Position numbers and translations under genes: made by a program. 64,000 bases of DNA, taken from NCBI GenBank assembly GCA_002269645.1, contig NIVC01000776.1, forward strand, positions 1 to 64,000, read 5' to 3'. Shown here one piece after another: positions 8,844 to 35,969 of this stretch. This stretch comes from Macrostomum lignano. Its lineage: Eukaryota. The notes beneath the pieces were generated by a model. The model ran no database searches and was not told the DNA's origin. It worked only from the letters and a program-made list of their open reading frames with translations. Position 1 is the first letter of the stretch; every line of letters begins with the position of its first letter.

Positions 8844-9155
8844 CTTCCTCCCCCAAGGGGAAGTGGGATCAATGAGATGAATTTTTACGAAAAGCGAATC
8901 GACGAAAGCGTACATGTAGTATTGTAGTATTGGAAAACAATCGAATTAGCAAACACCATTGCAGAGCAGATAAAAAGTAAGGAAATAAAATTGTGTCGAA
9001 CAAAATAGCGAAATATTGCATTGTCGAAAACTAGAATTAGTAGTGAATCAATAATTTGTATTGGAGAAACATACGTAATAATGGGTTGCATGAAAGACAG
9101 GAGAATTTGCGAAAAGTCAGTTCAAGATCATTGTCAGCTTCCGCACAGTCACTTA

Positions 9156-13133: not shown

Positions 13134-13409
13134 TGTGATGAATTAAGATTGAGACGAAGCGATTGAATTGGCTTGAGCCGCAAGTTGTAAACAGCGTTTC
13201 TTAACTGACGCGTTGGTCCTTTATATTGTATTATAGAACTGAGTACATGTAGTTAGGACGAACGATGTACATTGCGAAGAAGTACTGTACGTATAAACAG
13301 AAATCGATCAGTTCAGTGGAGGGGGAGGGTCTATAGTGGTAAGCTAAAATTGAGCAGCCAAACGCACAAAGCAGTATAGTTCAAATCGGTATAAGACAGC
13401 CAATTCACA
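13134..13409 (-). repeat. 5' LTR (276 bp)
   Basis: Identical by eye to 8568-8843; followed on the minus strand by the PBS. Confidence 0.95.
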
Positions 13410-13414
13410 GGTGT

Positions 13415-15055
13415 CTCTTATGTTTGCCATGGTGGCTCTTTTATGCTAGACATGGTGGCTCTTTAATGTTTGCCATGGTGGCTCCTAAATGTTTGACATG
13501 GTGGCTTTTTTATGTCCTACATGGTGGCTCTTCTATGTTTGACGTGGTGGCTCTTTTATGTTCGACATGGTGGCTCTTTAATGTTAGGCATGGTGGCTCT
13601 TTAATGTTTGAACGGTGGCTCTTTATGTTTGACATGGTGGCTCTTAAATATTTGCCATGGTGGGTCTTTTATGTTAGGCATGGAGTCACATATATGTTTC
13701 TCAATAGAATCTCTGTTCTCTACAAGTAACAAAAAGACAGCCAAATAGAGCTTTCACAAAGACAACAGAAAAACTGCTCAAATGAAGTGCAACGCAAAAA
13801 GAAAACATCCCAAGACAACAAGCATTGCCCCCAGGGGATAGCATGAAAAGCAACCCCCAGATAGCAAGCACCTCCCAGATAGCAAGTACCCCCAGATAGC
13901 AAGCACCCCCAGATAGCCAGAACCCCCAAGATAGCAAGCATCCCCCAGATAGCAAGCACCCCCAGATAGCAAAAACCCCCAAGATAGCAAGCATTCCCCA
14001 GATAGCAGGCACCCCCAGATAGCAAGCATCCAATTGATAGCAAGTATCTATCCTTAAATAGCAAGCATCCACCCGACAATAAGTATCTAGTGCAACAATT
14101 TCCTTAGCTTTATGGTGGCTTCTTTATGATTGACATGACGCTTCTTTTTACGTTTGTAATTGTCTCTTTTATGCTTGACATGGTGGCTCTTTAATTTTCG
14201 ACATGGTGGCTCTTTTATGTTCGACATGGTGGCTCTTTAATGTTTGACATGGTGGCTCTTTAATGTTTGACCTGGTGGCACTTTACTGTCTGCAATTATG
14301 GCTCTTTAATGTTTGACATGGTGGCTCTTTAATGTTTGACATGGTGGCTCTTTAATGTTTTACATGGTGGCTCTTTTATGTTCGACATGGTGGCTCTTTA
14401 ACGTTCGACATGGTGGCTCTTTAATGTTAGACATGGTGGCTCTTTAATGTTCGACATAGTGGCACTTTAATGTCTGAAATGGAGTCATGTATAAGCTTGA
14501 CATGGTGACTCGTTAATGTTTGACATGGTGGCTCTTTAATGTTCTACATGGTGGCTCTTTTATGTTCGATATGGTGGCTCTTTAATATTTGGCATGATGG
14601 CTCTTTAATGTTCTACATGGTGGCTCTTTTATGTTCGACATGGTGGCTCTTTAATGTTTGGCATGATGGCTCTTTAATGTTTGACATGGAGTCACGAATA
14701 TGCTTGATATGGTGACTCGTTAATGTTTGACATGGTGGCTCTTTGATGTTCTACATGATGGCTCTTTAATGTTTGACATGGAGTCACGAATATACTTGAC
14801 ATGGATACTCGTTAATGTTAGACATGGTGGCTCTTTAATGTTCGACATGGTGGTCCTTTTATGTTTGACATGATGGCTCTTTAATGTTTGACATGGAGTC
14901 ACATATATGTTGGACATGGTGGCTCTTTAATGTTCGACATGGTGGCTCTTTAATGTTCGACATGGTGGCTCTTTAATGTTCGACATGGTGGCTCTTTAAT
15001 GTTCGACATGGTGGCTCTTTAATGTTAGACATGGTGGCTCTTTAATGTTTGACAT
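13415..15055. repeat. Composite satellite: 23-nt GACATGGTGGCTCTTTAATGTTT arrays plus a second copy of the CCCCAGATAGCAAG block (~13850-14075)
   Basis: Tandem copies directly visible. Confidence 0.93.
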
Positions 15056-15114
15056 TGTGCTTCATTTGTGTTTAGCATTTTGCATTTTTAAGGTTTTTGA
15101 ATAAAAATATCTTT

Positions 15115-15190
15115 TTGCACTACTAAGATTTGAACCCAGGTCGCTGCATTAGCAGTCCAGTCTGTTCGCATCTATGCTATCTCTTGTCAA
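15115..15190 (-). pseudogene. Degenerate tRNA-like sequence (tRNA pseudogene or SINE head) with a GCT anticodon-like loop
   Basis: Minus strand TAGCATAGATG (A-box-like), CTGGA-CTGCTAA-TGCAG (anticodon arm), CTGGG-TTCAAAT-CTTAG (T-arm/B-box). No convincing acceptor stem. Confidence 0.4.
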
Positions 15191-17932
15191 TTGGAGAACA
15201 TGAATTTTTGCCCTTATAATTCAATTCTTATAGCAAATCGGTTAGAGTAAAAAGTTATGACATAATCGATTTCTCAGTCAGCCAGTATCAGTCCCAATTT
15301 AAATTAGCAATATGGTTACGCAATTTCAATCAAGTCGGGTGTGCATTTCTTCGACACTGTTTTCAACTTGTTGTGATGCAATCTTTATCACAATTGGAAT
15401 TCAGTCAGTCAGTGTTTTTTCTAGCATTCTTCCAATACATTTCAAGTCGAAAATTTAGCTTGACCTTTGCAAAAAGCATGTTTTTCGAATATTTAATCTC
15501 TTTAACATTGAGCAATTTCTTAGCCAAGACGCATGTACCGTCCCAGGAAAATTTCTGATCGAATGGTGCAAATTTGAAGAAAATCGGTTGAGCCAATTTT
15601 TCTGAAATCAATCGCATACCCACACACAACTCATTTTTAGTATATGGGATAATATGAAAAGTATCTCAAAAATTTCTAGACTAAGGTACCATTTTTACAG
15701 GAATGCTAAAGCTAGTGGAAATTTTAGATATATATTCATAAATAAATATGCTTAATAGTATCATGACATAAAGTATTTAATTTAAACCATTTGTCAAACA
15801 GATGAAAGTAGCCTATAACATTTATGATTTATATTTTCAATATTGTAATAAAATAGATAAATTTAAAAACAGTAAATTAAATTCAAATTATATTTTTTTA
15901 TATCATTGATACCATATTCATAGTAATAAAAATATATTACTAAAAAGCCATGAAGGCTATTCAAATATTAAAATGGTTAATCCCTAGGCTAAATAGTTAA
16001 CTACGAAGGTTGGAATCTATTTAATTTTTATTATATTACTGTATGTAATAGGCTTCGCTAATAACAGCCAGTGAGCCAGGTCCAGGCCTAGTTTTTTTCC
16101 AAACTTTCATTCCTGTCTAATATTAGTAATAATAATATTGACAAGTAATATACTCATTGTTATATTGACCTAGGCCTACTATATAAAGCAAATCAAGCCT
16201 ATTATTATTGGAGTTTATCATTTTAGTTTTGTAAAGTGTTTATACTATTATTAAGCTTATAAGCTATTATAATGAAGGATTGAATGCAGGATAGGATAGG
16301 AGTAAAATACTGAAAACAAGGCCTACTAGCCGCCTAGCCCTAGGCCCAGGTTGTATTGTATGTTAGGCGAGACCCTCCCTAATCATGAAAATAGATCACA
16401 ACACTAGCTACCGCCTACAAATCATTGATTTACGATTGTTCATAAGAAAAGAGCAAAAGTAAAGTATCCTCCTATGTGCATAAACGAGTGATAAAAACCT
16501 CAATGCAACTTTTTACACTTTACCCATCATTGTGCCAATTCTTGGTTTCGGCGAAAATATGTAACATATCTGCGTATGTAATTTAAAAGTAAATAATTTC
16601 GTATTTACTCTTATCAGGTTGTATTGGTATTATAGTATTTATATTGTATTTATCTCACTGTACTTTTTACTGTATGTAATTTATGTTATTTTGCAAGATA
16701 ATTTTATAATGAAACTTTTGTTTTAATGACTGATAAGTAACCAATATAAATATAAATCATCGATTGTTAATAAGAGTTCGCGCTCTGACTTGGCACTCTC
16801 GACGGCTGAAAGTTCAAGTGTTAGTATCGGCGATTCATTTCGTTACAAATAATAAATTTAACTTTTTTTAAATTTACGCATCGAGCGCACGCGAAAAACG
16901 TAATTAAGCAGCAAACTAGTCTCTTGCTTCAAGTCTAATTAAAAAAATGGCAATTAGGAATTTGAAGCCTCTTTGATCTCCTATTAAAAACCTTAGATAC
17001 GACCTCCCATTGTAAGTTCCATGGAATGCTGATAATGGCCAATATGATGACACTAGTGTCACAGACACTGAGACATGCAATCTGACACTTAAGACTGAAA
17101 CTGATATTCAAGCGGTATTTATGCACGATTTCTGGATGTTGGGACCATATGCTTCCAAGTAGCACCGTGATTTTAGGGCACCCAGTACTCGTCGTATCTT
17201 TGCAAATTACAATTGAATGAACCAAACTTCGTGCGGTTTTCTGACATTAACTAGAATTTGACACTGTTCCTGACATTGTTAACCTTCCCCAGCTGGTGCA
17301 GATGGCACGTACACAACGCTTGTTTGCGAAATTCCCAGATGGGCGGCTAGAGTGCGAGTTCTGGGAGACCGATCTGCTCCAGCAGTCTCTCACAGAGCGT
17401 CTGAGTCTCCGGTTGAAGGTCGGTCGGCCGACTGTTGGCCCAACTTCGATCAAGACTCGTATCGCTGCTTGAAAAACATTTCTGTGCTGCTCTCTAAAAG
17501 GCATCCTGTCGTTCATTTCAGCTTCCAGTAGCGCGCAGTAGTTCGTATAGCGAGACTGTTGCAGTTGATGGCACGATCATTTTTTAGCAGCGCTGACAGC
17601 TGTGACTGGATCAAGCATTCATTTGATCGAAGAAATAAGTGATTTTGGTTCGTCCAAATATGCTCTTTCATATTTCCCGAATAGCAAAATTACGTATCCA
17701 ATAGAAAGTGAAACGTCTCCAAGACGTAATTTTTTGGCTGCAGTGACGTATCCTATATATTTATGATCCTCCAAAGAAGCTTGGTCCGACCGGGCGTAGC
17801 TTGGTTGGGTGTTAAACCAGTGGGGCGTGGCTCTTGTGCGTTGGTGCGGGGGGTGGTGGGCCGGGCCTTGGTCACGTGCCCGCGGCCTGGGTGGCCCCAG
17901 ACCAGTCGTGGACAGATTCGCTGTTGCAGAAC

Positions 17933-18895
17933 ATGGAGCAATCTGAGCAAGAAGCCGAAGCAGACGACAACATCAGTACGGAGGCGGCTCGGGAGTCGGC
18001 GGCGGGCCTGGACGAGGACATCGCGAAGGCGGAGAAGGAGATCAGACTGTTGCAGCTACGCAAGGAAGCCGCTCAACTCAAGAGGGAGATCGGAGATCTG
18101 CAGCGCGAGTGTCCATCCACGCGTCCTATGAATCGCGGTGAGTGTGCCAAGCCTGCTGGCCCCAGTTACTTTCCTGATGGGTGTGATGATGCTGAATTAG
18201 ACCAAGCAGATAATGGCAATGAGCTGCTTGACAGATTGTTGTCACAGAACAGGGCCAATGAACGGATGGAGTGTTCTGGTAGACGTAAGGCTCTCCTGGT
18301 TCGTGATTTCCTCGACGGCTTTGAGCAGGAAGAGGTGCTGGCTAATGGTTCTGGTGGCCGAATCACTTACAAGAGCAGAAAACCTAATCCAGATAGCATC
18401 ACGGCAGCGCAGTATTTGGTAGGCAATTGCAGGCTGATGATGCAGATGATCAAGGATGGTGCCCTGGTGACTAGTAGAAATGGAACTGCCGACACGACTG
18501 ATTTGATGAATTACTTACGCTACTCAATACAGATTGGCGAGCTGTTTGACGCGGGCTTCGGCCTTGCGCAGGTGAATCGTTTTGACGAGGACTACCGCAC
18601 TAGGCAAGCTGAAACTGGCATGCGATGGGGCAAGGAGTCTTTCCAACTCGTTGCTAAGCACTTAATCAGAACTGGAACTCCAGCAAACCATGGAGTCAGC
18701 AAGTCATTGCCCCAGCCACGGCAGCAGCGTTTTCAAAAACCAATAGACCCCAAGAGCCTCAGAACGCCAGACGGGGAAGAGATCTGCTTGCACTTTATTC
18801 GCCGGGGGTGCTTCCGGTCGAGCTGCAAATTCCGGCACGTATGCCGCATCTGTTTCGAGGCCCACCCTGAGGCCAACCATTCGACAAAAAACTGA
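17933..18895 (+). CDS. Gag-like ORF1 (320 aa from ATG 17933) with an N-terminal coiled coil and a C-terminal Cys/His zinc finger
   Basis: First in-frame ATG at 17933; EDIAKAEKEIRLLQLRKEAAQLKREIGDL coiled coil; CLHFIRRGCFRSSCKFRHVCRICFEAH finger. Confidence 0.85.
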   Translation: MEQSEQEAEADDNISTEAARESAAGLDEDIAKAEKEIRLLQLRKEAAQLKREIGDLQRECPSTRPMNRGECAKPAGPSYFPDGCDDAELDQADNGNELLDRLLSQNRANERMECSGRRKALLVRDFLDGFEQEEVLANGSGGRITYKSRKPNPDSITAAQYLVGNCRLMMQMIKDGALVTSRNGTADTTDLMNYLRYSIQIGELFDAGFGLAQVNRFDEDYRTRQAETGMRWGKESFQLVAKHLIRTGTPANHGVSKSLPQPRQQRFQKPIDPKSLRTPDGEEICLHFIRRGCFRSSCKFRHVCRICFEAHPEANHSTKN

Positions 18896-18903
18896 AGTCT
18901 GCG

Positions 18904-20043
18904 ATGCTCTGTTTTAATCCTAAAATTTTGCCTAATGCTCAGCCTGCTTTAAATTTTAACAATCCTGTCGTTGGCAGTGCAGGGGGTCGCCTGTGTTTTT
19001 GTTCGTGGGATTCTGAGCTTGAGAATGACCCTGATCGGAATTTTATCCTAGACGGCATCGCAAATGGTTTTCGCATTACTGATGGCAAAGGGCTTTGTGA
19101 GACTTTTAATGCCAATTACATGTCTACTTCTACTTTTCATCGCGCTGTTGAGCTGCAAATTAAAGAAGAGATTGAGAATGGCAGGTATTTGATTGTGCCT
19201 AAGAAGCCTACGATGGTCAGCCCTCTGGGAGCAATTCCCAAGGATAACGGGAAGGTTCGACTTATTCATGACTGCAGCACGCCTCCGGGCTACTCGGTAA
19301 ATGACAACTATACGAAGAAGCTGAGCCCCAGGTTTGAGTCCGTCAAGAAGGTTGCAGCCTCTATCGGCAAGGGCTGGTTCATGGCAAAGCTTGATTTGTC
19401 GCAAGCTTACAGAAGCGTGGCGATCCATCCGGATGATTACCAGGCGACCGGCATTGGTTGGCGCTTTAAAGGCAACCGTGATCTGACATGGCTTGTCGAC
19501 ACCCGGCTACCCTTTGGTAGCTGCGCCTCGGTCGAGATTTTCTACCGGCTTACTCAAGCGGTCAAGAGGATGATGGTGCGACGCGGCGTGGCCAATATTT
19601 CGGTTTACCTGGATGATTTTCTGGTTGCGGCCGAGAGTGAGAAAGAGTGTATGGATGCTCTGAAAGAGCTGATTAAGCTGGTTCGCCAGTTAGGTTTTGG
19701 TGTCAATTGGAACAAAGTGGTTGAACCTACGCAATGCTTGGTGTATCTCGGTGTGCAGATTGATACTGTCCGTGGAGTTCTTAGTGTGCCGGCGGAAAAG
19801 TGTGAGGAAATGCGCACCACACTGCTTAACTTTTCGCAGCGCAGGCGTCTCTCGAAACGACAGCTTTCGTCGCTTTGTGGCAAGCTCAGCTGGGTCGTCC
19901 AGGTGGTGCACGCTGGGAGTTGCTTCCTAAGACCCCTGTTCGACCTGCTTAATGCCCTGGAAAAGCCACATCACAAAGTGCGTGTGTCCGCTGACACTGC
20001 GTATTTTACTCTGGTGGCGAGGTGCCCTTCTGAAGCTGCCTGA
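18904..20043 (+). CDS. Reverse transcriptase (DIRS-type)
   Basis: SPLGAIPKDNGKVRLIHDCS, KLDLSQAYR, LPFG, YLDD, YLG motifs. The conserved reading continues in the +1 frame near 19995. Confidence 0.93.
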   Translation: MLCFNPKILPNAQPALNFNNPVVGSAGGRLCFCSWDSELENDPDRNFILDGIANGFRITDGKGLCETFNANYMSTSTFHRAVELQIKEEIENGRYLIVPKKPTMVSPLGAIPKDNGKVRLIHDCSTPPGYSVNDNYTKKLSPRFESVKKVAASIGKGWFMAKLDLSQAYRSVAIHPDDYQATGIGWRFKGNRDLTWLVDTRLPFGSCASVEIFYRLTQAVKRMMVRRGVANISVYLDDFLVAAESEKECMDALKELIKLVRQLGFGVNWNKVVEPTQCLVYLGVQIDTVRGVLSVPAEKCEEMRTTLLNFSQRRRLSKRQLSSLCGKLSWVVQVVHAGSCFLRPLFDLLNALEKPHHKVRVSADTAYFTLVARCPSEAA

Positions 20044-20713
20044 TTTTCAGCTTTGGAGAAGTTGCACAAACGGCTGGATCATCGAAACCGATGCGAGCAG
20101 TGCTGGTGGCGGAGCCATTTTGCGCAATGGTAGCGGTATGGTGGATTGGCTGTACGTCAATTGGGATCTGGATGCTGGAGGAAAGTTTAAAGACAAGCAT
20201 ATCACGTACAAAGAAGCTATTGTTCCGCTGCTGGCTATGGTTCGCTGGGGTGCCTTTTTAAATGAGAGTTCGGTCGTGGTCTACTCCGACTCTAGTGCGG
20301 CTGTTGGCATGATTAACAGAGGTTGCTGTCGGCAGCCTGAGTTGCAGCCGCTGTTCCAGACTGCCATGCTCATTGCTGTTAGGCGTGGGGTTGAGGTGCG
20401 CGCTTTTCATGTGCCTGGCTGGTACCATGTCTTTGCGGACCCGTGCTCTAGGCTGCACGCCGTGGACAAAATGCGCGATTTTTTATTTCGGGTGTATGGC
20501 TCTGTTGACTGCTGTTTTAACGAGATCGCTAGCCATGCTTTCTGCCCTGCTGCCTCCGTTTTTCTCATTTTACAGGCCCTCCGCGCCAGACTCCCGACCG
20601 CCTCAGCAAGCGTTGCGCGTTTATCCTGGGCAATGCCTACGCGCCCCGCACGAAGCGGAGTTACCGGTCGCAGCTCGCGTCTTGGCTGCGATTTTGCAAT
20701 TCCCGGCACCTGA
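19952..20713 (+). CDS. RNase H domain (DIRS-type), in the +1 frame relative to RT
   Basis: LLWW, IETDAS-GGG, HITYKEA, YSDSS, HVPG...ADPCSR motifs. Confidence 0.85.
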   Translation: MPWKSHITKCVCPLTLRILLWWRGALLKLPDFQLWRSCTNGWIIETDASSAGGGAILRNGSGMVDWLYVNWDLDAGGKFKDKHITYKEAIVPLLAMVRWGAFLNESSVVVYSDSSAAVGMINRGCCRQPELQPLFQTAMLIAVRRGVEVRAFHVPGWYHVFADPCSRLHAVDKMRDFLFRVYGSVDCCFNEIASHAFCPAASVFLILQALRARLPTASASVARLSWAMPTRPARSGVTGRSSRLGCDFAIPGT

Positions 20714-21576
20714 CGCCGCTGCGGGCAGAGCCTGTGCACGTGGCTGAATACCTGGCCGAGCTGTCCACCCGGCTGTCAGCCTTTCGGAGTTGCCAGGCGT
20801 ATGCTAACGCGGTCTCGCTGTACTTCAGAGCTCTCGGCCGGTCGGACCCGTGCGAGTCGCCGATGGTTAAGCTGGTGCTTCGTGGTCTTCGCCGGTGTCT
20901 CAGTCGGCAGCAGCGCTCAAGGGAGCCATTCAGAGTCGCGGATCTCCTCAAGCTACACGCCCACCTGGACCAACGTCTGAAGAGTGACATCGCGTTCTGG
21001 GCAGCAGTTCTGGCAGCCTGGTGGGGTATGCTGCGAAAAGCGAATGTGACGACGCAATCGGGGCAGCTCGATCTGTGGTGCGACCTGGCAGCATCGAGCA
21101 TCGTCTTCTCAGAGTACGACTGTGAGCTCACTGTGCGGCATTCGAAGACCAACCAGTTTGGCGATCGAGTTCAGCGAGTGTTTCTTCCGAAACTGCCTGA
21201 TGGAAGCTTGGGTGTCCTGTGCCCGTTCCGTGCGCTCGAGCGGCAGCTACGGACAAACCGAATCGGCCAGGCGCCGCGTCCGGTTCACCTGTTCTCCACG
21301 TGGTCGTCCGCGGGATGGTTGCCTCTGACGGCTAGCAGGTTTGATAGCCGGCTTCGTTCGCTCTGCACATCGGCGGGTTTGTCGCCACGCGAGTTCACTG
21401 GCCACGGGCTGCGGCGTGGCGGCGCTACGGCAGCCATGCAGCTCGGTGTTCCACTGCCGATGATCAAGAAGCTGGGCGACTGGAAGGGCAACTCAGTGTT
21501 TCGCTATCTATCTGTTCGGGACTCGGATGCCAGGGCGGCGGTGCATGGCTTGGCTCGTCGGGTTGGCGCGCTCTAA
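20576..21576 (+). CDS. Tyrosine recombinase; the frame is open upstream of the GTG called in the track and has no ATG before the catalytic core
   Basis: N-terminal AYAPRTKRSY...WLRFC binding domain; catalytic motifs LRKAN, HSKTNQ, GHGLRRGGAT, LGDWKG-SVFRY. Confidence 0.92.
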
Positions 21577-22917
21577 CTCTCTCTCTCTCTTTGTCGAACT
21601 TTCTGGTTTGGGTTGGGCCAGGCTCGAACCTGCGCCTCTCGTGCCAACTGCCTTGACTTCGTCTCACTGGTTTAATGGTCCGACCGGGCGTAGCTTGGTT
21701 GGGTGTTAAACCAGTGGGGCGTGGCTCTTGTGCGTTGGTGCGGGGGGTGGTGGGCCTGGCCTTGGTCACGTGCCCGCGGCCTGGGTGGCGTTTATTTAAT
21801 ACGGTGCGGGCTGTCGCTGACCCGCCAAGCGCGTATTGATTTTTTTTCTCGCTTTTAAGTCTCCAAGGTTTTTATTTGGCTTTTAAGTCCGGTAAATTAA
21901 AGTTAATAAATACGCTCGAATACTCGTGCAATAGGGCCAGGCTCGAACCTGCGCCTCTCGTGCCAACTGCCTTGACTTCGTCTCACTGGTTTAACGTTTC
22001 TACAAAAATGGTAAATAAATAATAAATAATAATAGAACCATTTTTTATTCACCATCTTTGTAGAAATTCGAGATTCTGGAGGAGGAGGATCGTAGCATTC
22101 ATCAGATTGAAGAAATAAGTGGTTTTGGTTCGTCGAAATATGCTCTATATAAGCTTTCATCTTTTATATGAAATAAGATGAGTCTACAGGAATGACTGAT
22201 CCGATTTTTGCCTAATTATAGATACTAACTAAATGGAATTGAACTCATTTGAACTTTGAAGATCCCGGGATCCTTTTGGCCCTAATAACCCTAGCTAAAC
22301 AACCTGAGGGGCTGATCAGCCCCTTGCTTTTAGCGCAACAGGCCAAATGCAGTATATTGCAAGAAAAGAAAAGCGTAGCTATAGCTGACTTCATCGCATC
22401 GGTCGGGGAGAGCGTATGCGTGCGTGTGTGTGGGGGATCTGCTTAAAAATGCCTCAACTAGAAAAATCCGGTTTGGGGTGGCGAGGGCCGTATATCGCAC
22501 ACATACACGGATATCCTTCCCTCCTGGGAGAAGGCGATGTTGAATAGGTCCGCCGAGCGGAGCTGGGTGCCTCCCAGGCTGGGGTCACTGCGCCCTCTAC
22601 TTCCGGATCTGTCCATTCGGAGCGACTGGAAGTAGGAAAACCGATGGAGGTTGACGAGCGCTCGAACCATTTGAAGGCTTCTACGGGGTAAGGAAAACCG
22701 GCCCTGTGCCCGGCCCGGCCATCCTGCCAAGCCCATGCATGCGGCTGTTCTCCCTGAAAACGCGTGCATCAGGGGGGGGAGATGCAAATGAATGGAGGAT
22801 AGGAAAAAGAAATAGCCGCCGCCGACTTGAAAAACTGATAAGCCAGCGAGCTGGTTTATCCCGGTCCCGAAGGAGCGAATTGAATTCAGCCGCCAAGCTA
22901 CCAGCCCGAGCCAAGTC

Positions 22918-23430
22918 ATGGTGGATCAGCAGCAGAAGCCGTCGGAAGCCACAGTCGAGGAGGTGGAGAGTCGGCAGAACCAGTGTTCGCCCGTGGTGTG
23001 CATCCTCAGCGTCTGCCTCTGCCTGGTGCTGGTGGCGCTGATCGTGGTCACCGGCCTACACACGCACACGAAGCTGCAGGCTTCCGATGACGATGACAAC
23101 AGCCCGTTCGGCTGCCCGCTGGTCCCCGGCCGGTCTGCTGGCCTGCGCGGCCCCTGCCAGGCGCTGCGGAACCGCACCTTCCCCGTCACAGTCGGCCTCG
23201 GAGGCGGCGGCGGTGGCGGTGGCGGCGCCTGCGCCGACTTTTTCGGCTTCGCCTGCCCGCCGGGCGCCTCCTCGAAGCAGGCGAACGTGAGCTTCTCGCA
23301 GCTGCTGCTGCTCAGCGTGGCCCAGACCGCCTGCTCTCGCGGCCAGGCCGATGTGAACTCAGTTGTCGCCGCCTTCTTCAGCGTCACCGACGTCAACGCC
23401 GAGCTGGTGAAGCCGATATTCAAGTGCTGA
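22918..23430 (+). CDS. 170-aa type II membrane protein resembling a collapsed neprilysin/M13 peptidase (no HExxH)
   Basis: Short N-tail, hydrophobic helix, CADFFGFAC (cf. M13 PC-DF--FAC), QLLLLSVAQTAC (cf. QLFFL-FAQ-WC) and a terminal FKC. GC-rich coding-like composition. Confidence 0.6.
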   Translation: MVDQQQKPSEATVEEVESRQNQCSPVVCILSVCLCLVLVALIVVTGLHTHTKLQASDDDDNSPFGCPLVPGRSAGLRGPCQALRNRTFPVTVGLGGGGGGGGGACADFFGFACPPGASSKQANVSFSQLLLLSVAQTACSRGQADVNSVVAAFFSVTDVNAELVKPIFKC

Positions 23431-24419
23431 GGATCGAGCGCAGGCTGCACTCGGCTTTCTAGGAAAAACACCAGAGATTTAAACAAAAGTGGGTCGAAAA
23501 GCGCTCCAGACATTTTCGAAAGCGGCACGCAGTTCACCCAACACTGAGACTGAATTCAAGCCCCGAGTGTAAAGTGATAAAAGTAGAACCGATCAGGATG
23601 CACTTCCGTTATCAGCGCAGGGCCTTGACTACCGTACAAATAATGCAATAAATCTTTAATCCGCCCCCACTACTGCCGCAGTGTAAGCTTCTAATCAATA
23701 TCGACCCTTAGTTTTAATCGAATGTCGAAACGGTGCAATGCGACACTGTAATTATTAGATATTGCTCGATTGCCTTCTGTAGCTTCTTTGAGTTAATATT
23801 GCAGGCTTATTGGTGGACTTAGTGCTCTTTTCACCTTTGTTATTAGTACTAAAGTTTCAATAACTATTAATTAGTGTCCTTTACTGCTGTATGAAAATGA
23901 TGTTTTCTTGTACTTTTGATCAAATAAATAAAAACTATATAAGTCAATATGCTTCATATACTTCATACACCATATACTTTAAACTTGAAATTTTATCGGA
24001 TGTCTTGCGTGCCTGCCGCCAACCGCCCATTTCCCGGTCGCATCTGTCTTCCGCTGCCTGTTGTTGTTCTTCTTCAGGACTTTCCCAGCCCCGCGACAGG
24101 CGCGGGGAGGCGGCTGTGCAGAAATTTCGTCAGCTTGTTCTTCAGGGCCGGCATCCGCTGTTTTGTCTGGTTCGCAGAACTTCCAGACAAAAGCCTATTT
24201 TACACTGCGCTATGAAGTATTGCGCACAATCTGCGATGAAAACAGAATTGATTGCGCCCAGTGCGACTGCATGCAGTGTCAGAGAGGCCTTCGCAATCAA
24301 AAACACGAGCGTTAGTGATGAATGGATGGTCAGAAAGGATTGAATAGCCGGGGATGAAATGAATGCATCAGCAAGGAATCAATGCAAGGAGTTTCAAGCA
24401 TAAGTGAATAAAGTGAGCA

Positions 24420-24820
24420 GGAATGAGTGAAATTGTCAGAAAGGAATGAAATTGTCAGAAAGGAATGAAATTGTCAGGTAGGAATGAAATTGTCAGGAAG
24501 CAATGAAATTGTCAGAAAGGAATGAAATTGTCAGGAAGGAATGAGATTGTCAGAAAGGAATGAAATTGTCAGGGAGGAATGAGATTGTCAGGAAGGAATG
24601 AAATTGTCAGGAAGGAATGAAATTGTCAGAAAGGAATGAAATTGTCAGTGAGGAATGAAATTGTCAGGAAGGAATGAAATTGTCAGGAAGCAATGAGATT
24701 GTCAGGAAGCAATGAGATTGTCAGGAAGCAATGAGATTGTCAGGAAGCAATGAGATTGTCAGGAAGCAATGAAATTGTCAGGAAGCAATGAGATTGTCAG
24801 GAAGGAATGAGATTGTCAGG
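24420..24820. repeat. 19-nt minisatellite GAATGAAATTGTCAGGAAG
   Basis: Tandem copies visible. Confidence 0.93.
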
Positions 24821-25269
24821 AAAGACGCAATGAAGGAAGGAAGGGTTGGGAAGAAAGGAGCTGGACAGTCCTTCCTTCTTGTAAGGAAGGAATCAGGGAA
24901 GAGAGGGGATTAGATAAAGGAATAATGGGATTTAGGAGGTAGCGCACTGACCCCACACAGTTCAATGGCTTCATAAAGCAGCTGGCAGTACAGAAAGCTG
25001 TAGCGCAGAAAGCCCAAGTATCCGGCAATGGACAGCAATAAAGCGGTGCAGCAAGATGGTTGCAGAATTTCTGCGAGTTGCAATAAACACAGCTAGCTTT
25101 CCTCGTGCACTTTCCAGCACTTGATGTGCACAGCGAGCAATTGCTTCCGAAATAAAACTTGTACGAACTTCCAATTAGCCTTTTTGTTTTGCTGTTTTTG
25201 GTATACAAAGCCTAACTGATTATGGATTGTGTGCTCATATATCGAGTGTTCAGAGTAGATATATATTGT

Positions 25270-25540
25270 TCATATCGTTCTGTTCAGTGCTCATATATCA
25301 TTCTGCTCAGTGTTCACATGTCATTCTGCTCAGTTTTCACATGTCATTCTGCTCAGTGTTCACATGTCATTCTGCTCAGTGTTCACATGTCATTCTGCTC
25401 AGTTTTCACATGTCATTCTGCTCAGTGCTCATATATCACTCTACTCAGTGCTTATATATCACTCTGCTCAGTGCTCATATATCACTCTGCTCAGTGCTCA
25501 TGTATCATTCCGCTCAGTGCTCATATATCATTCTGCTCAG
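25270..25540. repeat. 23-nt minisatellite CATTCTGCTCAGTGTTCACATGT
   Basis: Tandem copies visible. Confidence 0.9.
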
Positions 25541-25844
25541 AGCTCATTAGTGCTAATACTGCTCAAAATATCATAAAAATCGGCAAGAAAAACTCAGTTA
25601 TGCACAGCCTAAAAAGCGCAAGTTCAACCCAGGGCCCCCATTCGTTGCATTTCTGCACTCGCCCGGTAGAGTCTAATCTCTGCATGTATGTTCGTGGCCA
25701 GAGCTACGAGTAGATAGCAGCCAGGCTGCTATAACTGAGCTGTTTTGTGTCAGAGCAGCTGGTAAGCGCAAAAACTCAGATCAGCGTTGACCAGTTTACA
25801 TAGGCAGAGCTCTATAACAGAAAATCTTCAGTAAGCAATACTGG

Positions 25845-28800
25845 ATGAGGCGTCACTGGTTGCTAAGCGGAGTCTGCGTCACGCTGGCCGTAGCCGCCGC
25901 TCTTTCGGCGCCACTGCGGTTTCAAAGTGGCCGCGCCGTCAGCATCAACCTCGAGTGCGACGTCTGCAAGACCGGCGTGGCTCTGGCGCGTCGGCTGTTG
26001 GATGAAGGGAGTGAGTTGGAGAGCTCAGCTGCTCGACCCGCCTCACCTTCAATCAGTTCACTGCATAAGTCTTCACAACACTACTCCAGAGCCTACCACA
26101 GCCTCCACTACACGCCCTACCACATACTCTACTCCCAGAGCCTACCACAGCCTCCACTGCACGCCCTACCACATACTCTACTCCCAGAGCCTACCACAGC
26201 CTCCACTGCACGCCCTACCACATACTCTACTCCCAGAGCCTACCTCAGCCTCCACTGCACGCCCTACCACGTACTCTACTCCCAGAGCCTACCTCAGCCT
26301 CCACTGCACGCCCTACCACATACTCTACTCCCAGAGCCTACCTCAGCCTCCACTGCACGCCCTACCACATACTCTACTCCCAGAGCCTACCACAGCCTCC
26401 ACTGCACGCCCTACCACATACTCTACTCCCAGAGCCTACCTCAGCCTCCACTGCACGCCCTACCACATACTCTACTCCCAGAGCCTACCTCAGCCTCCAC
26501 TGCACGCCCTACCACATACTCTACTCCCAGAGCCTACCTCAGCCTCCACTGCACGCCCTACCACATACTCTACTCCCAGAGCCTATCTCAGCCTCCACTG
26601 CACGCCCTACCACATACTCTACTCCCAGAGCCTACCACAGCCTCCACTGCACGCCCTACCACATACTCTACTCCCAGAGCCTACCACAGCCTCCACTGCA
26701 CGCCCTACCACATACTCTACTCCCAGAGCCTACCTCAGCCTCCACCTCAGCCTCCACTCCAAGGACTACACCAGACTCCATTCCTCAGGCTACCCAAGAC
26801 TCATTCTCCATAACTCGCCACTGTTTTAGAGAACAGCCTCGTGCCAGAAGTGGCTCGAATAATCTGCCTATACAGCTACAAAGAGGCGCCTCAGGTGTGC
26901 GACGGAGTCGTGAAATTGTGGCAGGTGAGCCCCGAACCTCACTGACTGACTCACTCTCACTGACTGACTGACTCACTCTCACTGACTGACTGACTCATTC
27001 TCACTGACTCACTCTCACTGACTCACTCTCACTGACTGACTCACTCTCACTGACTGACTGACTCACTCTCACTGACTCACTCTCACTGACTGACTCACTC
27101 TCACTGACTCACTCTCACTGACTGACTCACTCTCACTGACTGACTGACTCACTCTCACTGACTCACTCTCACTGACTGACTCACTCTCACTGACTGACTG
27201 ACTCACTCTCACTGACTCACTCTCACTGACTGACTCACTCTCACTGACTGACTGACTCACTCTCACTGACTGACTCACTTTCACTGACTGACTCACTCTC
27301 ACTTACTGACTCACTCTCACTGACTGACTCACTCTCACTGACTAGCTCACTCTCACTGACTGACTCACTCTCACTGACTGACTGACTCACTCTCACTGAC
27401 TCACTGACTGACTCACTCTCACTGACTGACTCACTGACTGACTCACTCTCACTGACTGACTCACTGACTGACTCACTCTCACTGACTGACTCACTGACTA
27501 ACTCACTCTCACTGACACCCCAGCCGATGTTCATGTATGCCCTGGATCATGTCTACCTGGACCCCGATGATGTCTGCGGCCAGTACTTGGGCGCCGGCTG
27601 CTCCAACGCTTCAATTCCGCAGTTCGACTACTTCTGGAACATCAGCCTGCCGCCAAATCCCAAGCCGCCAGTGAAGCCGATTTCGCCACCAAAGTCGGGT
27701 GCGCCAAGGCTTCGAATTTTGCACCTCAGCGACGTCCATATCGACGCCTTGTACAGCGTGGGCGCCAGCGCCGACTGCGGCCTCCCCACCTGCTGCAGAA
27801 GGAGCGACGGGATGCCGCGTGAGATGCTGGAGTCTGGGACTGGATGATGCTGGAGTCTGGGACTGGATGATGCTGGAGTCTGGGACAGGATGATGCTGGA
27901 GTCTGGGACTGGATGATGCTGGAGTCTGGGACAGGATGATGCTGGAGTCTAGAACTGGATGATGCTGGAGTCTGGGACAGTATGATGCTGGATTCTGGGA
28001 CTGGATGATGCTGGAGTCTGGGACAGGATGATGCTGGATTCTGGGACAGGATGATGCTGGAGTCTGGGACAGGATGATGCTGGAGTCTGAGACAGGATGA
28101 TGCTGGAGTCTGGGACAGGATGATGCTGGAGTCTGAGACAGGATGATGCTTGTGTCTGAGACAGGATGATGGTGGAGTCTGGGACAGGATGATGCTGGAG
28201 TCTAGCAAAGCAGTATGAAGCTAGAATGGGCTTATTATCCATGGTCTGTGGATGCAGCTGTGTAAACTCGGTGAACTCGGTAGCTGCAGAAGCTTTAGGT
28301 GGCTTCGCGGCCTCCCCATTCCGTCAGTGGCATAAGCAGCGGCATAGGCAGTGGCATAGGCAGTGGCATAGGCAGTGGCATAGGCAGTGGCATAGGCAGT
28401 GGCATAGGCAGTGGCATAGGCAGTGGCATAGGCAGTGGCATAGGCAGTGGCATAGGCAGTGGCATAGGCAGTGGCATAGGCAGTGGCATAGGCAGTGGCA
28501 TAGGCAGTGGCATAGGCAGTGGCATAGGCAGCGGCATAGGCAGTGGCATAGGCAGTGGCATAGGCAGTGGCATAGGCAGTGGCATAGGCAGTGGCATAGG
28601 CAGTGGCATAGGCAGCGGCATAGGCAGTGGCATAGGCAGTGGCATAGGCAGTGGCATAGGCAGTGGCATAGGCAGCGGCATAGGCAGTGGCATAGGCAGT
28701 GGCATAGGCAGTGGCATAGGCAGTGGCATAGGCAGTGGCATAGGCAGTGGCATAGGCAGTGGCACAGGCAGTGGCATAGGCAGTGGCATAGGCAGTGGCA

Positions 28801-31800
28801 TAGGCAGTGGCATAGGCAGTGGCATAGGCAGTGGCATAGGCAGTGGCATAGGCAGTGGCATAGGCAGTGGCATAGGCAGTGGCATAGGCAGTGGCATAGG
28901 CAGTGGCATAGGCAGTGGCATAGGCAGTGGCATAGGCAGTGGCATAGGCAGTGGCATAGGCAGTGGCATAGGCAGTGGCATAGGCAGTGGCATAGGCAGT
29001 GGCATAGGCAGTGGCATAGGCAGTGGCATAGGCAGTGGCATAGGCAGTGGCATAGGCAGTGGCATAGGCAGTGGCATAGGCAGTGGCATAGGCAGTGGCA
29101 TAGGCAGTGGCATAGGCAGTGGCATAGGCAGTGGCATAGGCAGTGGCATAGGCAGTGGCATAGGCAGTGGCATAGGCAGTGGCATAGGCAGTGGCATAGG
29201 CAGTGGCATAGGCAGTGGCATAGGCAGTGGCATAGGCAGTGGCATAGGCAGTGGCATAGGCAGCGGCATAGGCAGTGGCATAGGCAGTGGCATAGGCAGT
29301 GGCATAGGCAGTGGCATAGGCAGTGGCATAGGCAGTGGCATAGGCAGTGGCACAGGCAGTGGCATAGGCAGTGGCATAGGCAGTGGCATAGGCAGTGGCA
29401 TAGGCAGTGGCATAGGCAGTGGCATAGGCAGTGGCATAGGCAGTGGCATAGGCAGTGGCATAGGCAGTGGCATAGGCAGTGGCATAGGCAGTGGCATAGG
29501 CAGTGGCATAGGCAGTGGCATAGGCAGTGGCATAGGCAGTGGCATAGGCAGTGGCATAGGCAGTGGCATAGGCAGTGGCATAGGCAGTGACATAGGCAGT
29601 GGCATAGGCAGTGGCACAGGCAGTGGCATAGGCAGTGGCATAGGCAGTGGCATAGGCAGTGGCATAGGCAGTGGCATAGGCAGTGGCATACCGTAGGCAG
29701 TGGCATAGGCAGTGGCATAGGCAGTGGCATAGGCAGTGGCATAGGCAGTGGCATAGGCAGAAGCATAGGCAGTTATCCTCTAACCGGCTTGTTGCAGAAA
29801 TGGTTCAGACTAATCTGATTGATGAATCCGATGTAGGTCAGACAAGTGCATGCACACTGGGATGTCTTTTTGCGCCCACTTAATCGCATAATTTACTACG
29901 CTTGTAGTGCAATACACGCCAAACTTTCTATTGCTACTGATACTACTGATAAGAGTAGAAAAGCGAGAATATTTTGCACCGACGTCAATTTTGCAGCATC
30001 GTCGAAGCGCCGAGCCGCCTACTGGGGCGACTACAACTGCGACCTGCCCTGGTGGACCGCCGACAACTCCTTCAAGCAGATCGCCAGGGATCGACAGGTG
30101 GGCGCAGAAAATAGCTGCAAGATTTTTGCATTTTCCTACTGTCAGTAATGAAGTTAGCATATTCAGTGGGACTCAGCAGCCTCTCAAACTCATTCAGTGG
30201 GACACAGCAGCCTCTCAAACTCATTCAGTGGGACACTACAGCCTCTCAAACTCATTCAGTGGGAGGACACAGCAGCCTCTCAAACTCATTCAGTGGGACA
30301 CAGCAGCCTCTCAAACTCATTCAGTGGGAGGACACAGCAGCCTCTCAAACTCATTCAGTGGGAGGACACAGCAGCCTCTCAAACTCATTCAGTGGGAGGA
30401 CACAGCAGCCTCTCAAACTCATTCAGTGGGACACTACAGCCTCTCAAACTCATTCAGTGGGAGGACACAGCAGCCTCTCAAACTCATTCAGTGGGACACA
30501 GCAGCCTCTCAACTCATTCAGTGGGAGGACACAGCAGCCTCTCAAACTCATTCAGTGGGAGGACACAGCAGCCTCTCAAACTCATTCAGTGGGAGGACAC
30601 AGCAGCCTCTCAAACTCATTCAGTGGGAGGACACAGCAGCCTCTCAAACTCACTCAGTGGGAGGACACAGCACCACTTGACCACTTGACCCAGTCACCAT
30701 AAAACTACTCAATTTCCATCAAGTTCAATACAAAATCTGCACCCGTCGATCACCTGTTGACTCCCCACTCGAGCAGTTCGACCTGATCTACTTCACCGGT
30801 GACCTGCCGGACCACCACGTGTGGGAGCAGACCCGGCAGGAGGAGATCGCCCTGTACAGCGGCTTCACTCAGCTGGTGCAGAAGTACTTTCCTGGCGTGC
30901 CTCTGGTGGTTGCTATGGGCAACCATGAGAGCGTGCCAGTGAATAGGTTTGTTTGGTGTAATGCATTGCAAATTTGTTGGAATAAAAAATTATAAAAAGA
31001 AGCTAAATTTGATGCTTGCCAATCCAGCTTCCCTCCGCGGTACATAGTGGGCAACGATTCAATGGACTGGCTGTACACCAAGGTGTGGCAGCTCCTGTCC
31101 CCCTGGATTCCGGCTGATCAGAAGGCGAACGTGCTCAGGTATTCGGCGCTTTCTGCATTGGCTGAATTGCTCAGGGACTTGACAGATGGCAGCGTCTGTC
31201 TGACTCACCCTTTCCTATACTCTCAACTTCCTCTAAGTTTCTGACTCTCACCTCTCCGACTCTCACATCTCTGACTCTCACCTCCCCGACTCTCATCTCT
31301 CTGACTCTCACCTCTCCGACTCTCATCTCTCTGACTCTCACCTCTCCGACTCTCACCTCTCCGACTCTCACCTCTCTGACTCTCACCTCTCTAATTCCTC
31401 ACCTCTCTGATTCTCATCTCTCTAATTCTCACCTCCCCAACTCTCACCTCTCTGATTCTCACCTCTCCGACTCTCACCTCTCCGATTCTCACCTCTCCGA
31501 TTCTCACCTCTCCGACTCTCACCTCTCCGACTCTCACCTCTCCGACTCTCACCTCTCCGATTCTTACCTCTCCGATTCTCACCTCTCCGACTCTCACATC
31601 TCTGACTCTCACCTCCCCGACTCTCATCTCTCTGACTCTCACCTCTCCGACTCTCATCTCTCTGACTCTCACCTCTCCGACTCTCACCTCTCCGACTCTT
31701 ACCTCTCTGACTCTCACCTCTCTGACTCTCACCTCTCCGACTCTCACCTCTCCGACTCTCACCTCTCCGACTCTCACCTCTCCGACTCTCACCTCTCCGA

Positions 31801-34800: not shown

Positions 34801-35357
34801 TCACCCACCCTGACCCAAGCAATCCTCGCCTACCCTGACCCAAGCAACTCTCACCCACCTTGACCCAAGCAGCTCACCCACCCACCCACTGCAGCAAGTG
34901 CTCAGCTACAGCAACTACATATTCAACCTCACGGAAGCCAACTTGGCAGGGCAGGGCAGGGAGCCAGTCTGGTTCCTTGAGTACAACACCACGGTGAGTA
35001 GTTGGGCTAATTAGTTTAAATTTACAAGCCACTCATTTCCCCAACAATGAAACTCATTCCTGACGATTGCCAGTCCGCCTACGACATGCAACTCGCCTTC
35101 CCACAAAGCTGGGCCGACCTGGTCCGGCGGTTCGAATCCGATGACAGCCTGTTTCAGAAATTCTACCGGTGAGTCGCTTTTTAGCTCTGAATTGCACTTC
35201 CCGAGCACATTCTCACAGAACCTTTCAAACATTCAGGTTTCACTACAAGCTGAATGTTCCCAGCGACCAGCCCTCTGTGTGTACCGGAAACTGCAAGCGG
35301 AAATTCATTTGTCATTTCCGGAATGCGCGCAAACATGACAAGACTTTTCCTTGTTAA
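25845..35357 (+). CDS. SMPD1: Acid sphingomyelinase, complete 12-exon gene (561 aa)
   Basis: Exons 25845-26010, 26830-26924, 27524-27818, 29997-30097, 30777-30946, 31028-31138, 32236-32316, 32405-32569, 33332-33518, 34895-34993, 35074-35168, 35237-35357. All GT-AG and phase-consistent (1686 nt). Signal peptide, saposin-B cysteines, proline-rich linker and metallophosphoesterase motifs SDVH, TGD, GNHE, GHIPP, GHTH. Confidence 0.95.
26080..26760. repeat. 49-nt minisatellite in SMPD1 intron 1
   Basis: Unit CCTACCACAGCCTCCACTGCACGCCCTACCACATACTCTACTCCCAGAG. Confidence 0.95.
26938..27516. repeat. 14-18 nt ACTGACTCACTCTC array filling SMPD1 intron 2
   Basis: Tandem copies run up to the acceptor at 27523. 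Confidence 0.95.
27820..28202. repeat. 23-nt GATGATGCTGGAGTCTGGGACAG array in SMPD1 intron 3
   Basis: Starts immediately at the donor GTGAG (27819). Confidence 0.93.
28325..29772. repeat. 12-nt GGCATAGGCAGT array (~120 copies) in SMPD1 intron 3
   Basis: Highly homogeneous; source of the IGSG, RQWH, PLPM and CHCL pseudo-ORFs. Confidence 0.98.
30160..30670. repeat. 31-34 nt minisatellite in SMPD1 intron 4
   Basis: Unit CAGCAGCCTCTCAAACTCATTCAGTGG(GAG)GACA. Confidence 0.95.
31240..32222. repeat. 15-nt CTCTCACCTCTCCGA pyrimidine-rich array in SMPD1 intron 6
   Basis: Tandem copies visible up to the acceptor. Confidence 0.95.
32632..33290. repeat. 16-nt GGCATGGATTCCCCAA array in SMPD1 intron 8
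   Basis: Tandem copies visible. Confidence 0.96.
33642..34888. repeat. 25-nt CCCTGACCCAAGCAACCCTCACCCA array in SMPD1 intron 9
   Basis: Tandem copies run to the acceptor at 34894. Confidence 0.96.

Positions 35358-35466: not shown

Positions 35467-35969
<503 letters not shown>

What the first reader, a model, noticed from the sequence alone, without database searches (positions are those of the whole stretch)
22918..23430. Mini-neprilysin: N- and C-terminal staples retained, whole catalytic core absent
Seen: after the TM helix there are exactly six Cys (GCP, GPC, AC, FAC, TAC, FKC-stop). CADFFGFAC is followed after only about 14 residues by QLLLLSVAQTAC, and there is no HExxH. No M13-like coding sequence was recognisable in the 2.4 kb before SMPD1. 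Established (from memory of human neprilysin): disulfides 57-62, 80-735 and 88-695 tie the N-terminal PC-DF--FAC segment to the C-terminal FAQ-WC and AF-C segments, while the other pairs lie in the body. Inference: a clean internal deletion of over 500 aa that keeps just these three pairs, giving a small non-catalytic type II membrane module. Paired retention and an intact ORF argue for selection rather than decay.
Basis: partly seen in the sequence, partly recalled or inferred. Interest (0 to 1): 0.72.

Follow-up and report, generated by a model that had tools for sequence, protein, structure and literature searches.

The report
Orphan flatworm membrane protein, neprilysin ancestry unproven
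This is a real, conserved, single-exon Macrostomum lignano gene for a small cysteine-rich membrane protein with no protease core; its likeness to the two ends of neprilysin sits where predicted but is too weak to show that it descends from that enzyme.

Summary
Window 22918-23430 (+) is an intact 170-aa ORF with one hydrophobic anchor, six later Cys, CADFFGFAC, then QLLLLSVAQTAC 14 residues on. It has no HExxH, and no M13 coding sequence occurs anywhere in the 64 kb.

The organism is the flatworm Macrostomum lignano. Two other genomic copies are annotated as hypothetical 170-aa proteins, in an annotation built from transcripts. Across the three copies, 9 of 11 variable sites are synonymous. 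There are no indels, while the flanks are 4-6% diverged with many indels. dN/dS is 0.04-0.11. So this is a selected, unspliced coding gene, and the tail after GTGAG is coding too.

M13 ancestry is not established.
- For: the best local matches of the two halves fall on neprilysin 80-106 and 679-707 (shuffle p about 0.004 and 0.013), and at the same places in ECE-1.
- Against: Pfam gives nothing and hhalign probabilities are 1-8%. Exhaustive HMMER over 1.84 billion proteins finds only the gene's own copies. A PDB-wide search never lists M13 and ranks unrelated families (transferrins, a plant thionin) higher.

Best reading: a lineage-restricted, non-enzymatic, signal-anchored glycoprotein. I put a mini-neprilysin relic at about 0.3.

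The parts
22918..23430 (+). Complete single-exon CDS, 170 aa plus stop; window copy of the M. lignano gene annotated elsewhere as BOX15_Mlig009671g1 / BOX15_Mlig025205g1
   Evidence: Three copies differ at 11 nt: 9 synonymous, 2 conservative (A112V, I167L), no indels. NG86 omega 0.04-0.11.
22918..22986 (+). Residues 1-23: short acidic N-terminal tail, inferred to be cytosolic
   Evidence: Read from the sequence; hydropathy -1.3. The side of the membrane is inferred.
22987..23058 (+). Residues 24-47: the single hydrophobic segment, inferred to be an uncleaved signal anchor; four Cys lie in or beside it (23, 28, 33, 35)
   Evidence: Kyte-Doolittle 19-residue mean 3.16 at residues 25-43; AF2 helix 25-48.
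23113..23160 (+). Residues 66-81: C66 to C80 segment with GRSAG.
   Evidence: The same stretch gives the chance-level transferrin and thionin matches.
23170..23178 (+). N-glycosylation sequon N85-R-T
   Evidence: pattern only.
23200..23226 (+). Run of nine Gly (residues 95-103), a flexible linker in front of the CADFFGFAC motif
   Evidence: pLDDT below 50 for residues 96-104.
23230..23256 (+). CADFFGFAC (residues 105-113), like neprilysin C80-TDFFKYA-C88, but followed by PPG instead of the family's GGW. One copy has V at residue 112.
23284..23292 (+). It is read through as coding.
23299..23334 (+). QLLLLSVAQTAC (residues 128-139), like neprilysin Q684-LFFLNFAQVW-C695; predicted helix
23395..23430 (+). 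C-terminal NAELVKPIFKC-stop (residues 160-170). No alignment tool reported this match.
   Evidence: not in any reported alignment.
23647..23652 (+). AATAAA, a candidate poly(A) signal 217 nt after the stop, identical in all three copies
   Evidence: Its function is inferred.

Best explanation
A real, transcribed, single-exon gene found only in Macrostomum lignano. It encodes a 170-aa single-pass membrane protein.

Its layout, read from the sequence:
- a 23-residue acidic N-terminal tail;
- one hydrophobic signal anchor;
- a luminal or extracellular part of about 120 residues with two N-glycosylation sequons, a nine-glycine hinge and six Cys, enough for three disulfides.

It has no zinc-binding or other catalytic motif. 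It must therefore act, if at all, by binding or as a structural or tethered module, not as a peptidase.

Shown: the ORF, its conservation and purifying selection in three genomic copies, the absence of M13 core sequence, and the absence of detectable relatives. Inferred: N-in/C-out topology, disulfides, glycosylation and a binding function. The M13-like motifs at both ends are either a deep relic or coincidence, and current evidence cannot tell which.
For: The ORF is intact. Two further copies in GCA_002269645.1 encode 170-aa proteins differing by one residue each. Of 11 variable sites, 9 are synonymous and 2 conservative, with no indels; the flanks differ by 4-6% plus dozens of gap positions. 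omega is 0.04-0.11, and P(at most 2 nonsynonymous among 11 random changes) = 0.0005. Constraint stops at the + strand stop codon, not at the end of the antisense ORF. The Mlig_3_7 annotation derives only from a genome-guided transcriptome assembly plus TransDecoder (PMC5730564). AATAAA is conserved. No homologue appears in 5.8 billion or 1.84 billion representative proteins apart from its own copies and one repeat-driven artefact. There is no Pfam family.
Against: No direct expression data were seen here; expression is inferred from how the annotation was made. The positive-inside rule does not settle topology, because both flanks are net acidic. The AF2 model has low confidence (mean pLDDT 55), so fold and disulfides are untested. 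The colinear hits to the two neprilysin ends are not explained if the gene has no M13 history, except as coincidence.
Confidence: 0.6

Rival explanations
1. Mini-neprilysin. The gene descends from an M13 peptidase by loss of about 570 internal residues. The loss came either from a genomic deletion or from retroposition of an exon-skipped mRNA. It kept the N-terminal C...C and C-x-DFF-x-x-A-C segments and the C-terminal Q-L-x-x-L-x-x-A-Q-x-x-C ... F-x-C segments, whose Cys form pairs 57-62, 80-735 and 88-695 in neprilysin.
For: The best Smith-Waterman match of residues 57-123 against all 750 residues of neprilysin is 80-106 (score 42, shuffle p 0.004). The best match of residues 124-170 is 679-707 (score 38, p 0.013). 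ECE-1 gives the same places (p 0.004 and 0.02). The top two hhalign hits are the same two places, in colinear order. Among 978 control windows from all long stop-free stretches of the window, the summed targeted score is 80 for this ORF and at most 56 for any other. The N-half alignment ends and the C-half alignment begins at the same point, N123|V124. The protein ends exactly at the Cys that would match C735, and it lacks C747, whose partner C621 would have been deleted. One hydrophobic anchor precedes the motifs, as in M13. The A/V variation at residue 112 falls at a position that also varies among neprilysin orthologues, where it is A or S.
Against: There is no Pfam M13 hit for the whole protein or either half. 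hhalign probabilities are only 3.9-7.7% and 1.2-2.6%. No M13 protein was found among 1.84 billion representatives or in PDB-wide searches at E up to 10. The same N half scores higher against unrelated families: duck ovotransferrin SW 55-61 versus 42, and PDB-wide E 0.18-0.9 for thionin, transferrin and saxiphilin. The family's GGW after the second Cys and the W of FAQxWC are missing. The C66-C80 spacing is 13, not 4. The third hhalign hit is to the NAFY motif and is out of order, which shows that chance hits to conserved M13 motifs occur. With the core gone there is no obvious reason to keep core-packing residues such as DFF. The hypothesis was framed after seeing both motifs, so the targeted p-values overstate the support.
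Confidence: 0.3
2. First exon of an ordinary full-length M13 gene. The transcript splices at GTGAG (23287) into distant catalytic exons, and the last 47 codons are intron read-through.
For: GTGAG lies exactly where the neprilysin N-terminal alignment stops.
Against: There is no M13-like coding sequence in any frame of the 64 kb, including 40 kb downstream. An SMPD1-like gene on the same strand starts 2.4 kb downstream. Transcript-derived models at two loci give the unspliced 170-aa product. The tail has 3 synonymous changes, 1 conservative change and no indels (dN 0-0.010, dS 0.03-0.09). AATAAA lies 217 nt after the stop.
Confidence: 0.03
3. Not a protein-coding gene on this strand. It is either a chance ORF in GC-rich DNA, or the 203-codon antisense ORF (22926-23537, -) is the real one.
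For: The antisense ORF is intact in all three copies and shares its wobble positions with the + frame, so the third-position bias alone does not identify the strand.
Against: The antisense ORF starts with GTG, and its product is a proline-rich mirror image with no features. In its private 107 nt, 3 of 6 changes are nonsynonymous and divergence rises to 5.6%, so constraint ends at the + stop. The annotation and AATAAA are on the + strand. The deficit of nonsynonymous changes has P=0.0005.
Confidence: 0.03
4. Relic of a transferrin-lobe fragment. C-x4-GRSAG ... A-x-A-x-FF-x-x-x-C-x-PGA in residues 66-118 matches the anion-binding stretch of transferrins.
For: This is the best real-family hit in unbiased PDB searches: duck and hen ovotransferrin E 0.27-2.2 over 50 query residues, both lobes; saxiphilin and melanotransferrin E 0.3-0.95. 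SW is 55-61 against the duck segment.
Against: The E-values are at chance level. There is no Pfam Transferrin hit. Against human transferrin the score is only 34-41 (p 0.05-0.3), and the C half matches nothing.
Confidence: 0.03

Closest known systems
M13 zinc metallopeptidases (neprilysin, ECE-1; Pfam PF05649 + PF01431)
   Same: There is a short N-terminal tail, then one hydrophobic anchor, then a Cys-bearing ectodomain. C-x-DFF-x-[FY]-A-C occurs near its start. A Q-L-x-x-L-x-x-A-Q-x-x-C helix and a terminal F-x-C occur near its end, in the same order as in neprilysin.
   Different: It is 170 aa instead of about 750. It lacks HExxH, GENIADNGG/ExxxD and NAYY motifs, and the whole of domains 1 core, 2 and 3. 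GGW and the Trp of FAQxWC are missing. There is no profile or database-wide match.
Catalytically inactive M13 members such as Drosophila Nepl15 (PMC7822871)
   Same: Both are non-enzymatic proteins with M13-type conserved Cys, proposed to work by binding rather than cleavage.
   Different: Nepl15 keeps the full three-domain fold and only has substituted catalytic residues. Here the entire fold is absent, so even if the ancestry is real this would be a different kind of derivative.
Taxonomically restricted (orphan) flatworm genes in the M. lignano transcript-based annotation (PMC5730564; PMC5816591)
   Same: It is known only from M. lignano and is annotated as a hypothetical protein from transcript evidence. 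It is present in several diverged copies, as expected from this genome's large-scale duplication.
   Different: Nothing separates it from this class except the M13-like end motifs.
Transferrin lobe anion-binding stretch (CHTGLGRSAGWNIP...FFSASCVPGA)
   Same: It shares an exact GRSAG and FF-x-x-x-C-x-PGA at similar spacing.
   Different: The E-values are at chance level. There is no Pfam hit and no match beyond 50 residues. It is used here as a yardstick for what coincidence produces.

Membership tests
Peptidase M13 (neprilysin/ECE) | HExxH zinc-binding motif | tested here: not met
   No HE..H in the 170 aa.
Peptidase M13 (neprilysin/ECE) | Third zinc ligand / GENIADNGG (ExxxD) motif and NAYY substrate-binding motif | tested here: not met
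   Absent from the translation. tblastn of neprilysin finds none in the 64 kb. The only NAFY-like hit, SVVAAFFS, is out of order with P 0.14-0.26.
Peptidase M13 (neprilysin/ECE) | Match to Pfam PF05649 (Peptidase_M13_N) or PF01431 (Peptidase_M13) | tested here: not met
   No hit at E up to 10 for the whole protein, the N half, the C half or the ectodomain with the Gly run trimmed.
Peptidase M13 (neprilysin/ECE) | Significant sequence similarity to family members in a database-wide search | tested here: not met
   Exhaustive phmmer over 1.84 billion representatives returns only its own copy plus a repeat artefact. PDB-wide phmmer lists no M13 chain.
Peptidase M13 (neprilysin/ECE) | N-terminal ectodomain motif C-x-D-F-[FY]-x-[FY]-[AS]-C-G-x-W | tested here: inconclusive
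   CADFFGFAC fits the first nine positions, but PPG replaces G-x-W. hhalign P 0.0045-0.011, probability 3.9-7.7%.
Peptidase M13 (neprilysin/ECE) | C-terminal motif Q-L-F-F-x-x-F-A-Q-x-W-C and a later F-x-C | tested here: inconclusive
   QLLLLSVAQTAC shares Q, L, L, A, Q and C. SW 38, p 0.013 against neprilysin; SW 32, p 0.02 against ECE-1; hhalign P 0.017-0.045, probability 1.2-2.6%. The terminal F-K-C was not aligned by any tool.
Peptidase M13 (neprilysin/ECE) | Disulfides linking the N- and C-terminal segments (80-735 and 88-695 in neprilysin) | not testable with these tools
   The AF2 model has mean pLDDT 55 and no coordinates are returned. Foldseek finds nothing.
Peptidase M13 (neprilysin/ECE) | Type II topology (short cytosolic N-tail, signal anchor) | tested here: inconclusive
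   There is one hydrophobic segment at residues 24-47 after a 23-residue tail, and the sequons and Cys lie on the C-terminal side. The charge distribution does not decide the orientation.
Transferrin (PF00405) | Profile match to the transferrin lobe | tested here: not met
   No Pfam hit. PDB phmmer E 0.27-2.2 only. Human transferrin p 0.05-0.3.
Taxonomically restricted protein-coding gene | No homologue outside the lineage, plus evidence that the frame is coding | tested here: met
   Only M. lignano copies were found. omega 0.04-0.11 with no indels. Other Macrostomum species could not be searched.

The most novel reading that the evidence does not exclude
The gene is a true 'mini-neprilysin': an M13 peptidase stripped of its whole catalytic body. 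Only the N- and C-terminal segments that are disulfide-stapled to each other survive, and purifying selection maintains them as a free-standing membrane-anchored module with a new, non-proteolytic role.
Probability: 0.3. Interest if true: 0.6.

Novelty: new member of a known kind. Interest (0 to 1): 0.33.

Why it matters
As verified, this is one more lineage-restricted small membrane protein in a flatworm genome rich in such genes. It is useful mainly as a clean example of an orphan ORF with direct evidence of purifying selection across duplicated copies.

If the M13 ancestry were confirmed, it would show that the terminal 'staple' of a large peptidase fold can survive alone as a selected protein. 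That route of domain erosion has not been described for M13: the known inactive members keep the full fold (PMC7822871).

The case is also a caution. Two colinear motif matches at the predicted places looked persuasive, yet unbiased searches gave equal or better matches to unrelated Cys-rich families.

Tried and rejected
1. Pfam on the whole ORF and on three sub-sequences gave no M13 and no transferrin hit; the only output was a sub-threshold INV_N hit on the anchor.
2. Word-index search of 5.8 billion proteins and exhaustive phmmer of 1.84 billion representatives returned only the gene's own copies. P0002 is a 1620-aa repeat protein that scores by summing nine weak repeats, and BLASTP shows nothing real.
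3. I tried to list weak word-sharing candidates with a very high E-value cut-off.
4. A neprilysin query returned only amniote neprilysins (78-93% identical). No flatworm M13 sequence or diverse M13 profile could be obtained.
5. Single-sequence AF2 gave mean pLDDT 55, and Foldseek against the PDB gave no match at E<=0.001 and no M13 chain among its 36 listed matches (E 2-10). I did not run AF2 with neprilysin rows in the alignment, because a good model would only reflect the assumed homology.
6. A search of the literature and supplements for Mlig009671 found nothing.
7. The codon-position test turned out not to be strand-specific, because the antisense ORF shares wobble positions. The strand was settled from where constraint ends.
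8. tblastn of the ORF on the window and both loci found no further copies.

Full report
**What is there.** Window 22918-23430 (+) is an ATG-to-TGA ORF of 170 codons. It encodes a 23-residue acidic tail and one strongly hydrophobic segment (residues 24-47; 19-residue Kyte-Doolittle mean 3.16). A 123-residue C-terminal part follows, with exactly six Cys (66, 80, 105, 113, 139 and 170, the last residue). It also has two N-x-[ST] sequons (N85, N123) and a run of nine Gly (95-103). There is no HExxH. CADFFGFAC is residues 105-113 and QLLLLSVAQTAC follows 14 residues later.

**Organism and copies.** The only database match is a 170-aa hypothetical protein of the flatworm Macrostomum lignano (P0001, BOX15_Mlig009671g1, 99% identical). 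Its 90% cluster holds a second one (P0123, BOX15_Mlig025205g1). Both lie on long contigs of GCA_002269645.1 in the same setting as in the window, with an SMPD1-like gene (Metallophos + ASMase_C) 2.7-2.8 kb downstream on the same strand. The window's own product differs from each by one residue and is not itself in the collection. That assembly's gene models come only from a genome-guided transcriptome assembly (StringTie, TACO and TBONE, with ORFs called by TransDecoder; PMC5730564). The unspliced 170-aa CDS is therefore what assembled transcripts gave at two loci. This is an inference from how the annotation was made; I saw no reads.

**Selection.**
- The three copies are 4-6% diverged in the flanks and carry dozens of gap positions there. 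Inside the 513 nt there are 11 variable sites and no indel.
- Nine of the 11 are synonymous third-position changes. Two are conservative replacements (A112V, I167L).
- Nei-Gojobori omega is 0.04-0.11, and dS (0.02-0.06) is close to the flank divergence. Only 0.05% of simulations placing 11 random changes gave two or fewer replacements.
- The 47 codons after GTGAG (23287-23291) behave like the rest: 3 synonymous changes, 1 conservative change, no indels.
- One caveat: a 203-codon antisense ORF (22926-23537) shares its wobble positions with the + frame and is also intact, so codon-position bias alone does not identify the strand. However, in the 107 nt private to the antisense ORF, 3 of 6 changes are replacements and divergence rises to 5.6%. 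Constraint therefore ends at the + stop codon.
- A conserved AATAAA lies 217 nt after that stop.
- Conclusion: a real coding gene on the + strand, read through GTGAG.

**Not the first exon of a larger M13 gene.** tblastn of neprilysin against all six frames of the 64 kb finds no M13 exon. The only match to the ORF is CADFFGFAC itself, at E=5.1.

**Test of M13 ancestry: what speaks for it.**
- I split the ectodomain at N123|V124 and aligned each half against all 750 residues of a real neprilysin.
- The best local alignment of the N half is to residues 80-106 (score 42; 0.4% of shuffles reach it). The best alignment of the C half is to residues 679-707 (score 38; 1.3% of shuffles), with C139 on C695.
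- ECE-1 end segments, verified against PDB 3DWB, give the same two places (p 0.004 and 0.02).
- hhalign against an alignment of 83 neprilysin orthologues ranks the same two places first and second, in colinear order.
- Among 978 control windows cut from every long stop-free stretch of the window, the summed targeted score is 80 for this ORF and at most 56 for any other.

**Test of M13 ancestry: what speaks against it.**
- Pfam finds no M13 domain in the whole protein, in either half, or in the ectodomain with the Gly run trimmed.
- hhalign puts the probability of homology at 3.9-7.7% for the N motif and 1.2-2.6% for the C motif. Its third hit is to the conserved NAFY motif but in the wrong order, which shows that chance hits to M13 motifs occur.
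- An exhaustive HMMER scan of 1.84 billion representatives finds no M13 protein.
- Most telling are the unbiased searches of all PDB sequences. They never list neprilysin, ECE-1 or any other M13 chain.
- For the same N half they list a gamma-thionin (E 0.18). They list ovotransferrins over 50 residues (C-x4-GRSAG ... A-x-A-x-FF-x-x-x-C-x-PGA; E 0.27-2.2). They also list saxiphilin and melanotransferrin (E 0.3-0.95).
- The C half retrieves only a designed helical repeat.
- The N half scores 55-61 against the duck ovotransferrin segment, against 42 for neprilysin. Against human transferrin it falls to 34-41, p 0.05-0.3.
- These families cannot all be ancestors. Coincidences of this size are therefore normal for a Cys- and Gly-rich segment, and the M13 match is weaker than at least one of them.
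- Several details also differ from the family pattern. PPG replaces the invariant G-x-W. The Trp of FAQxWC is Ala. Thirteen residues separate C66 and C80, against four between neprilysin C57 and C62. No tool aligned the terminal F-K-C.
- The hypothesis was framed after both motifs had been seen, so the targeted p-values overstate the support.

**Structure.** Single-sequence AlphaFold2 gave mean pLDDT 55. It predicts helices at 126-140, 146-156 and 161-164, which would suit the helical neprilysin C-terminus but proves nothing. Foldseek against the PDB found nothing at E<=0.001 (best E 2.0). Disulfide geometry could not be tested.

**Verdict.** The gene is best described as a lineage-restricted, selectively maintained, non-enzymatic, signal-anchored glycoprotein with a disulfide-capable ectodomain (confidence about 0.6). 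Topology, glycosylation, disulfides and a binding role are inferences. I keep the mini-neprilysin relic as the main rival at about 0.3.
- For it: two colinear best matches at the predicted places, an anchor in front of them, and a protein that ends on the Cys that would pair with C105.
- Known inactive M13 proteins such as Drosophila Nepl15 keep the entire fold. A core-less derivative would therefore be new if proven.

**Limits.** No flatworm M13 sequence and no other Macrostomum species could be reached with these tools. A neprilysin query returned only amniote orthologues. Those two searches are the decisive missing steps.

Noticed in passing
window 9156-13133 (-), inside 8133-15649: A 1325-codon ORF carries RVT_1, RT_RNaseH, Integrase_H2C2 and rve domains (a Ty3/gypsy-type LTR retrotransposon pol). 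It lies in a 7.5-kb stretch that is absent from the corresponding place in locus L001. The sequence was neither extracted nor printed.
   Followed up: partly
window 17781-21995, ORFs 17834-21576 (+): A second insertion relative to L001 has a reverse-transcriptase ORF and an ORF with a weak tyrosine-recombinase (Phage_integrase) hit, i.e. DIRS-like. It ends about 920 bp upstream of the ORF's ATG. Alignment of L002 to the window also starts only at 21995.
   Followed up: partly
window 22926-23537 (-): A 203-codon antisense ORF (GTG start, proline-rich) is intact in all three copies because its wobble positions coincide with those of the + frame. It is a by-product, not a second gene: constraint is relaxed in its private 107 nt.
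   Followed up: yes
window 23113-23271 (residues 66-118): A transferrin-like pair of motifs (C-x4-GRSAG and FF-x-x-x-C-x-PGA) occurs at transferrin-like spacing, with a gamma-thionin-like RSAG-x-x-GPC. All are at chance-level E-values of 0.18-2.2.
   Followed up: yes
window 1-799, 6221-7148, 14164-15059, 24418-24822, 25272-25547, 26074-26745, 26938-27495, 27823-28203, 28325-29773, 30161-30672, 31243-32219, 32634-33287, 33642-34883, 35467-35969: There are many long minisatellite arrays (periods 12-49 nt, up to 120 copies, 80-99% matches, most of them at 87% or more). Most lie in and around the SMPD1-like gene, and their copy numbers differ between the window and L001/L002. This fits the 15% tandem-repeat content reported for this genome.
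   Followed up: partly
window about 25845 onward (+); L001 13173-20513: An SMPD1-like gene (Metallophos + ASMase_C, 561-aa product in the annotation) lies on the same strand 2.4 kb downstream. The '.g1' suffix of the small gene's name leaves open that both belong to one trans-spliced transcriptional unit.
   Followed up: no
window 41388-42332 (+) and 54973-55824 (-): One exon-sized ORF has an amiloride-sensitive sodium channel (ASC/DEG-ENaC) domain (E 6e-26). Another has a carboxyl-transferase domain (E 4e-29).
   Followed up: no
L001 3873-6583 (-), about window 5790-8130: The upstream neighbour on the opposite strand has a weak MTRES1_C hit. A 37-nt tandem array (window 6221-7148) lies within its span.
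   Followed up: no
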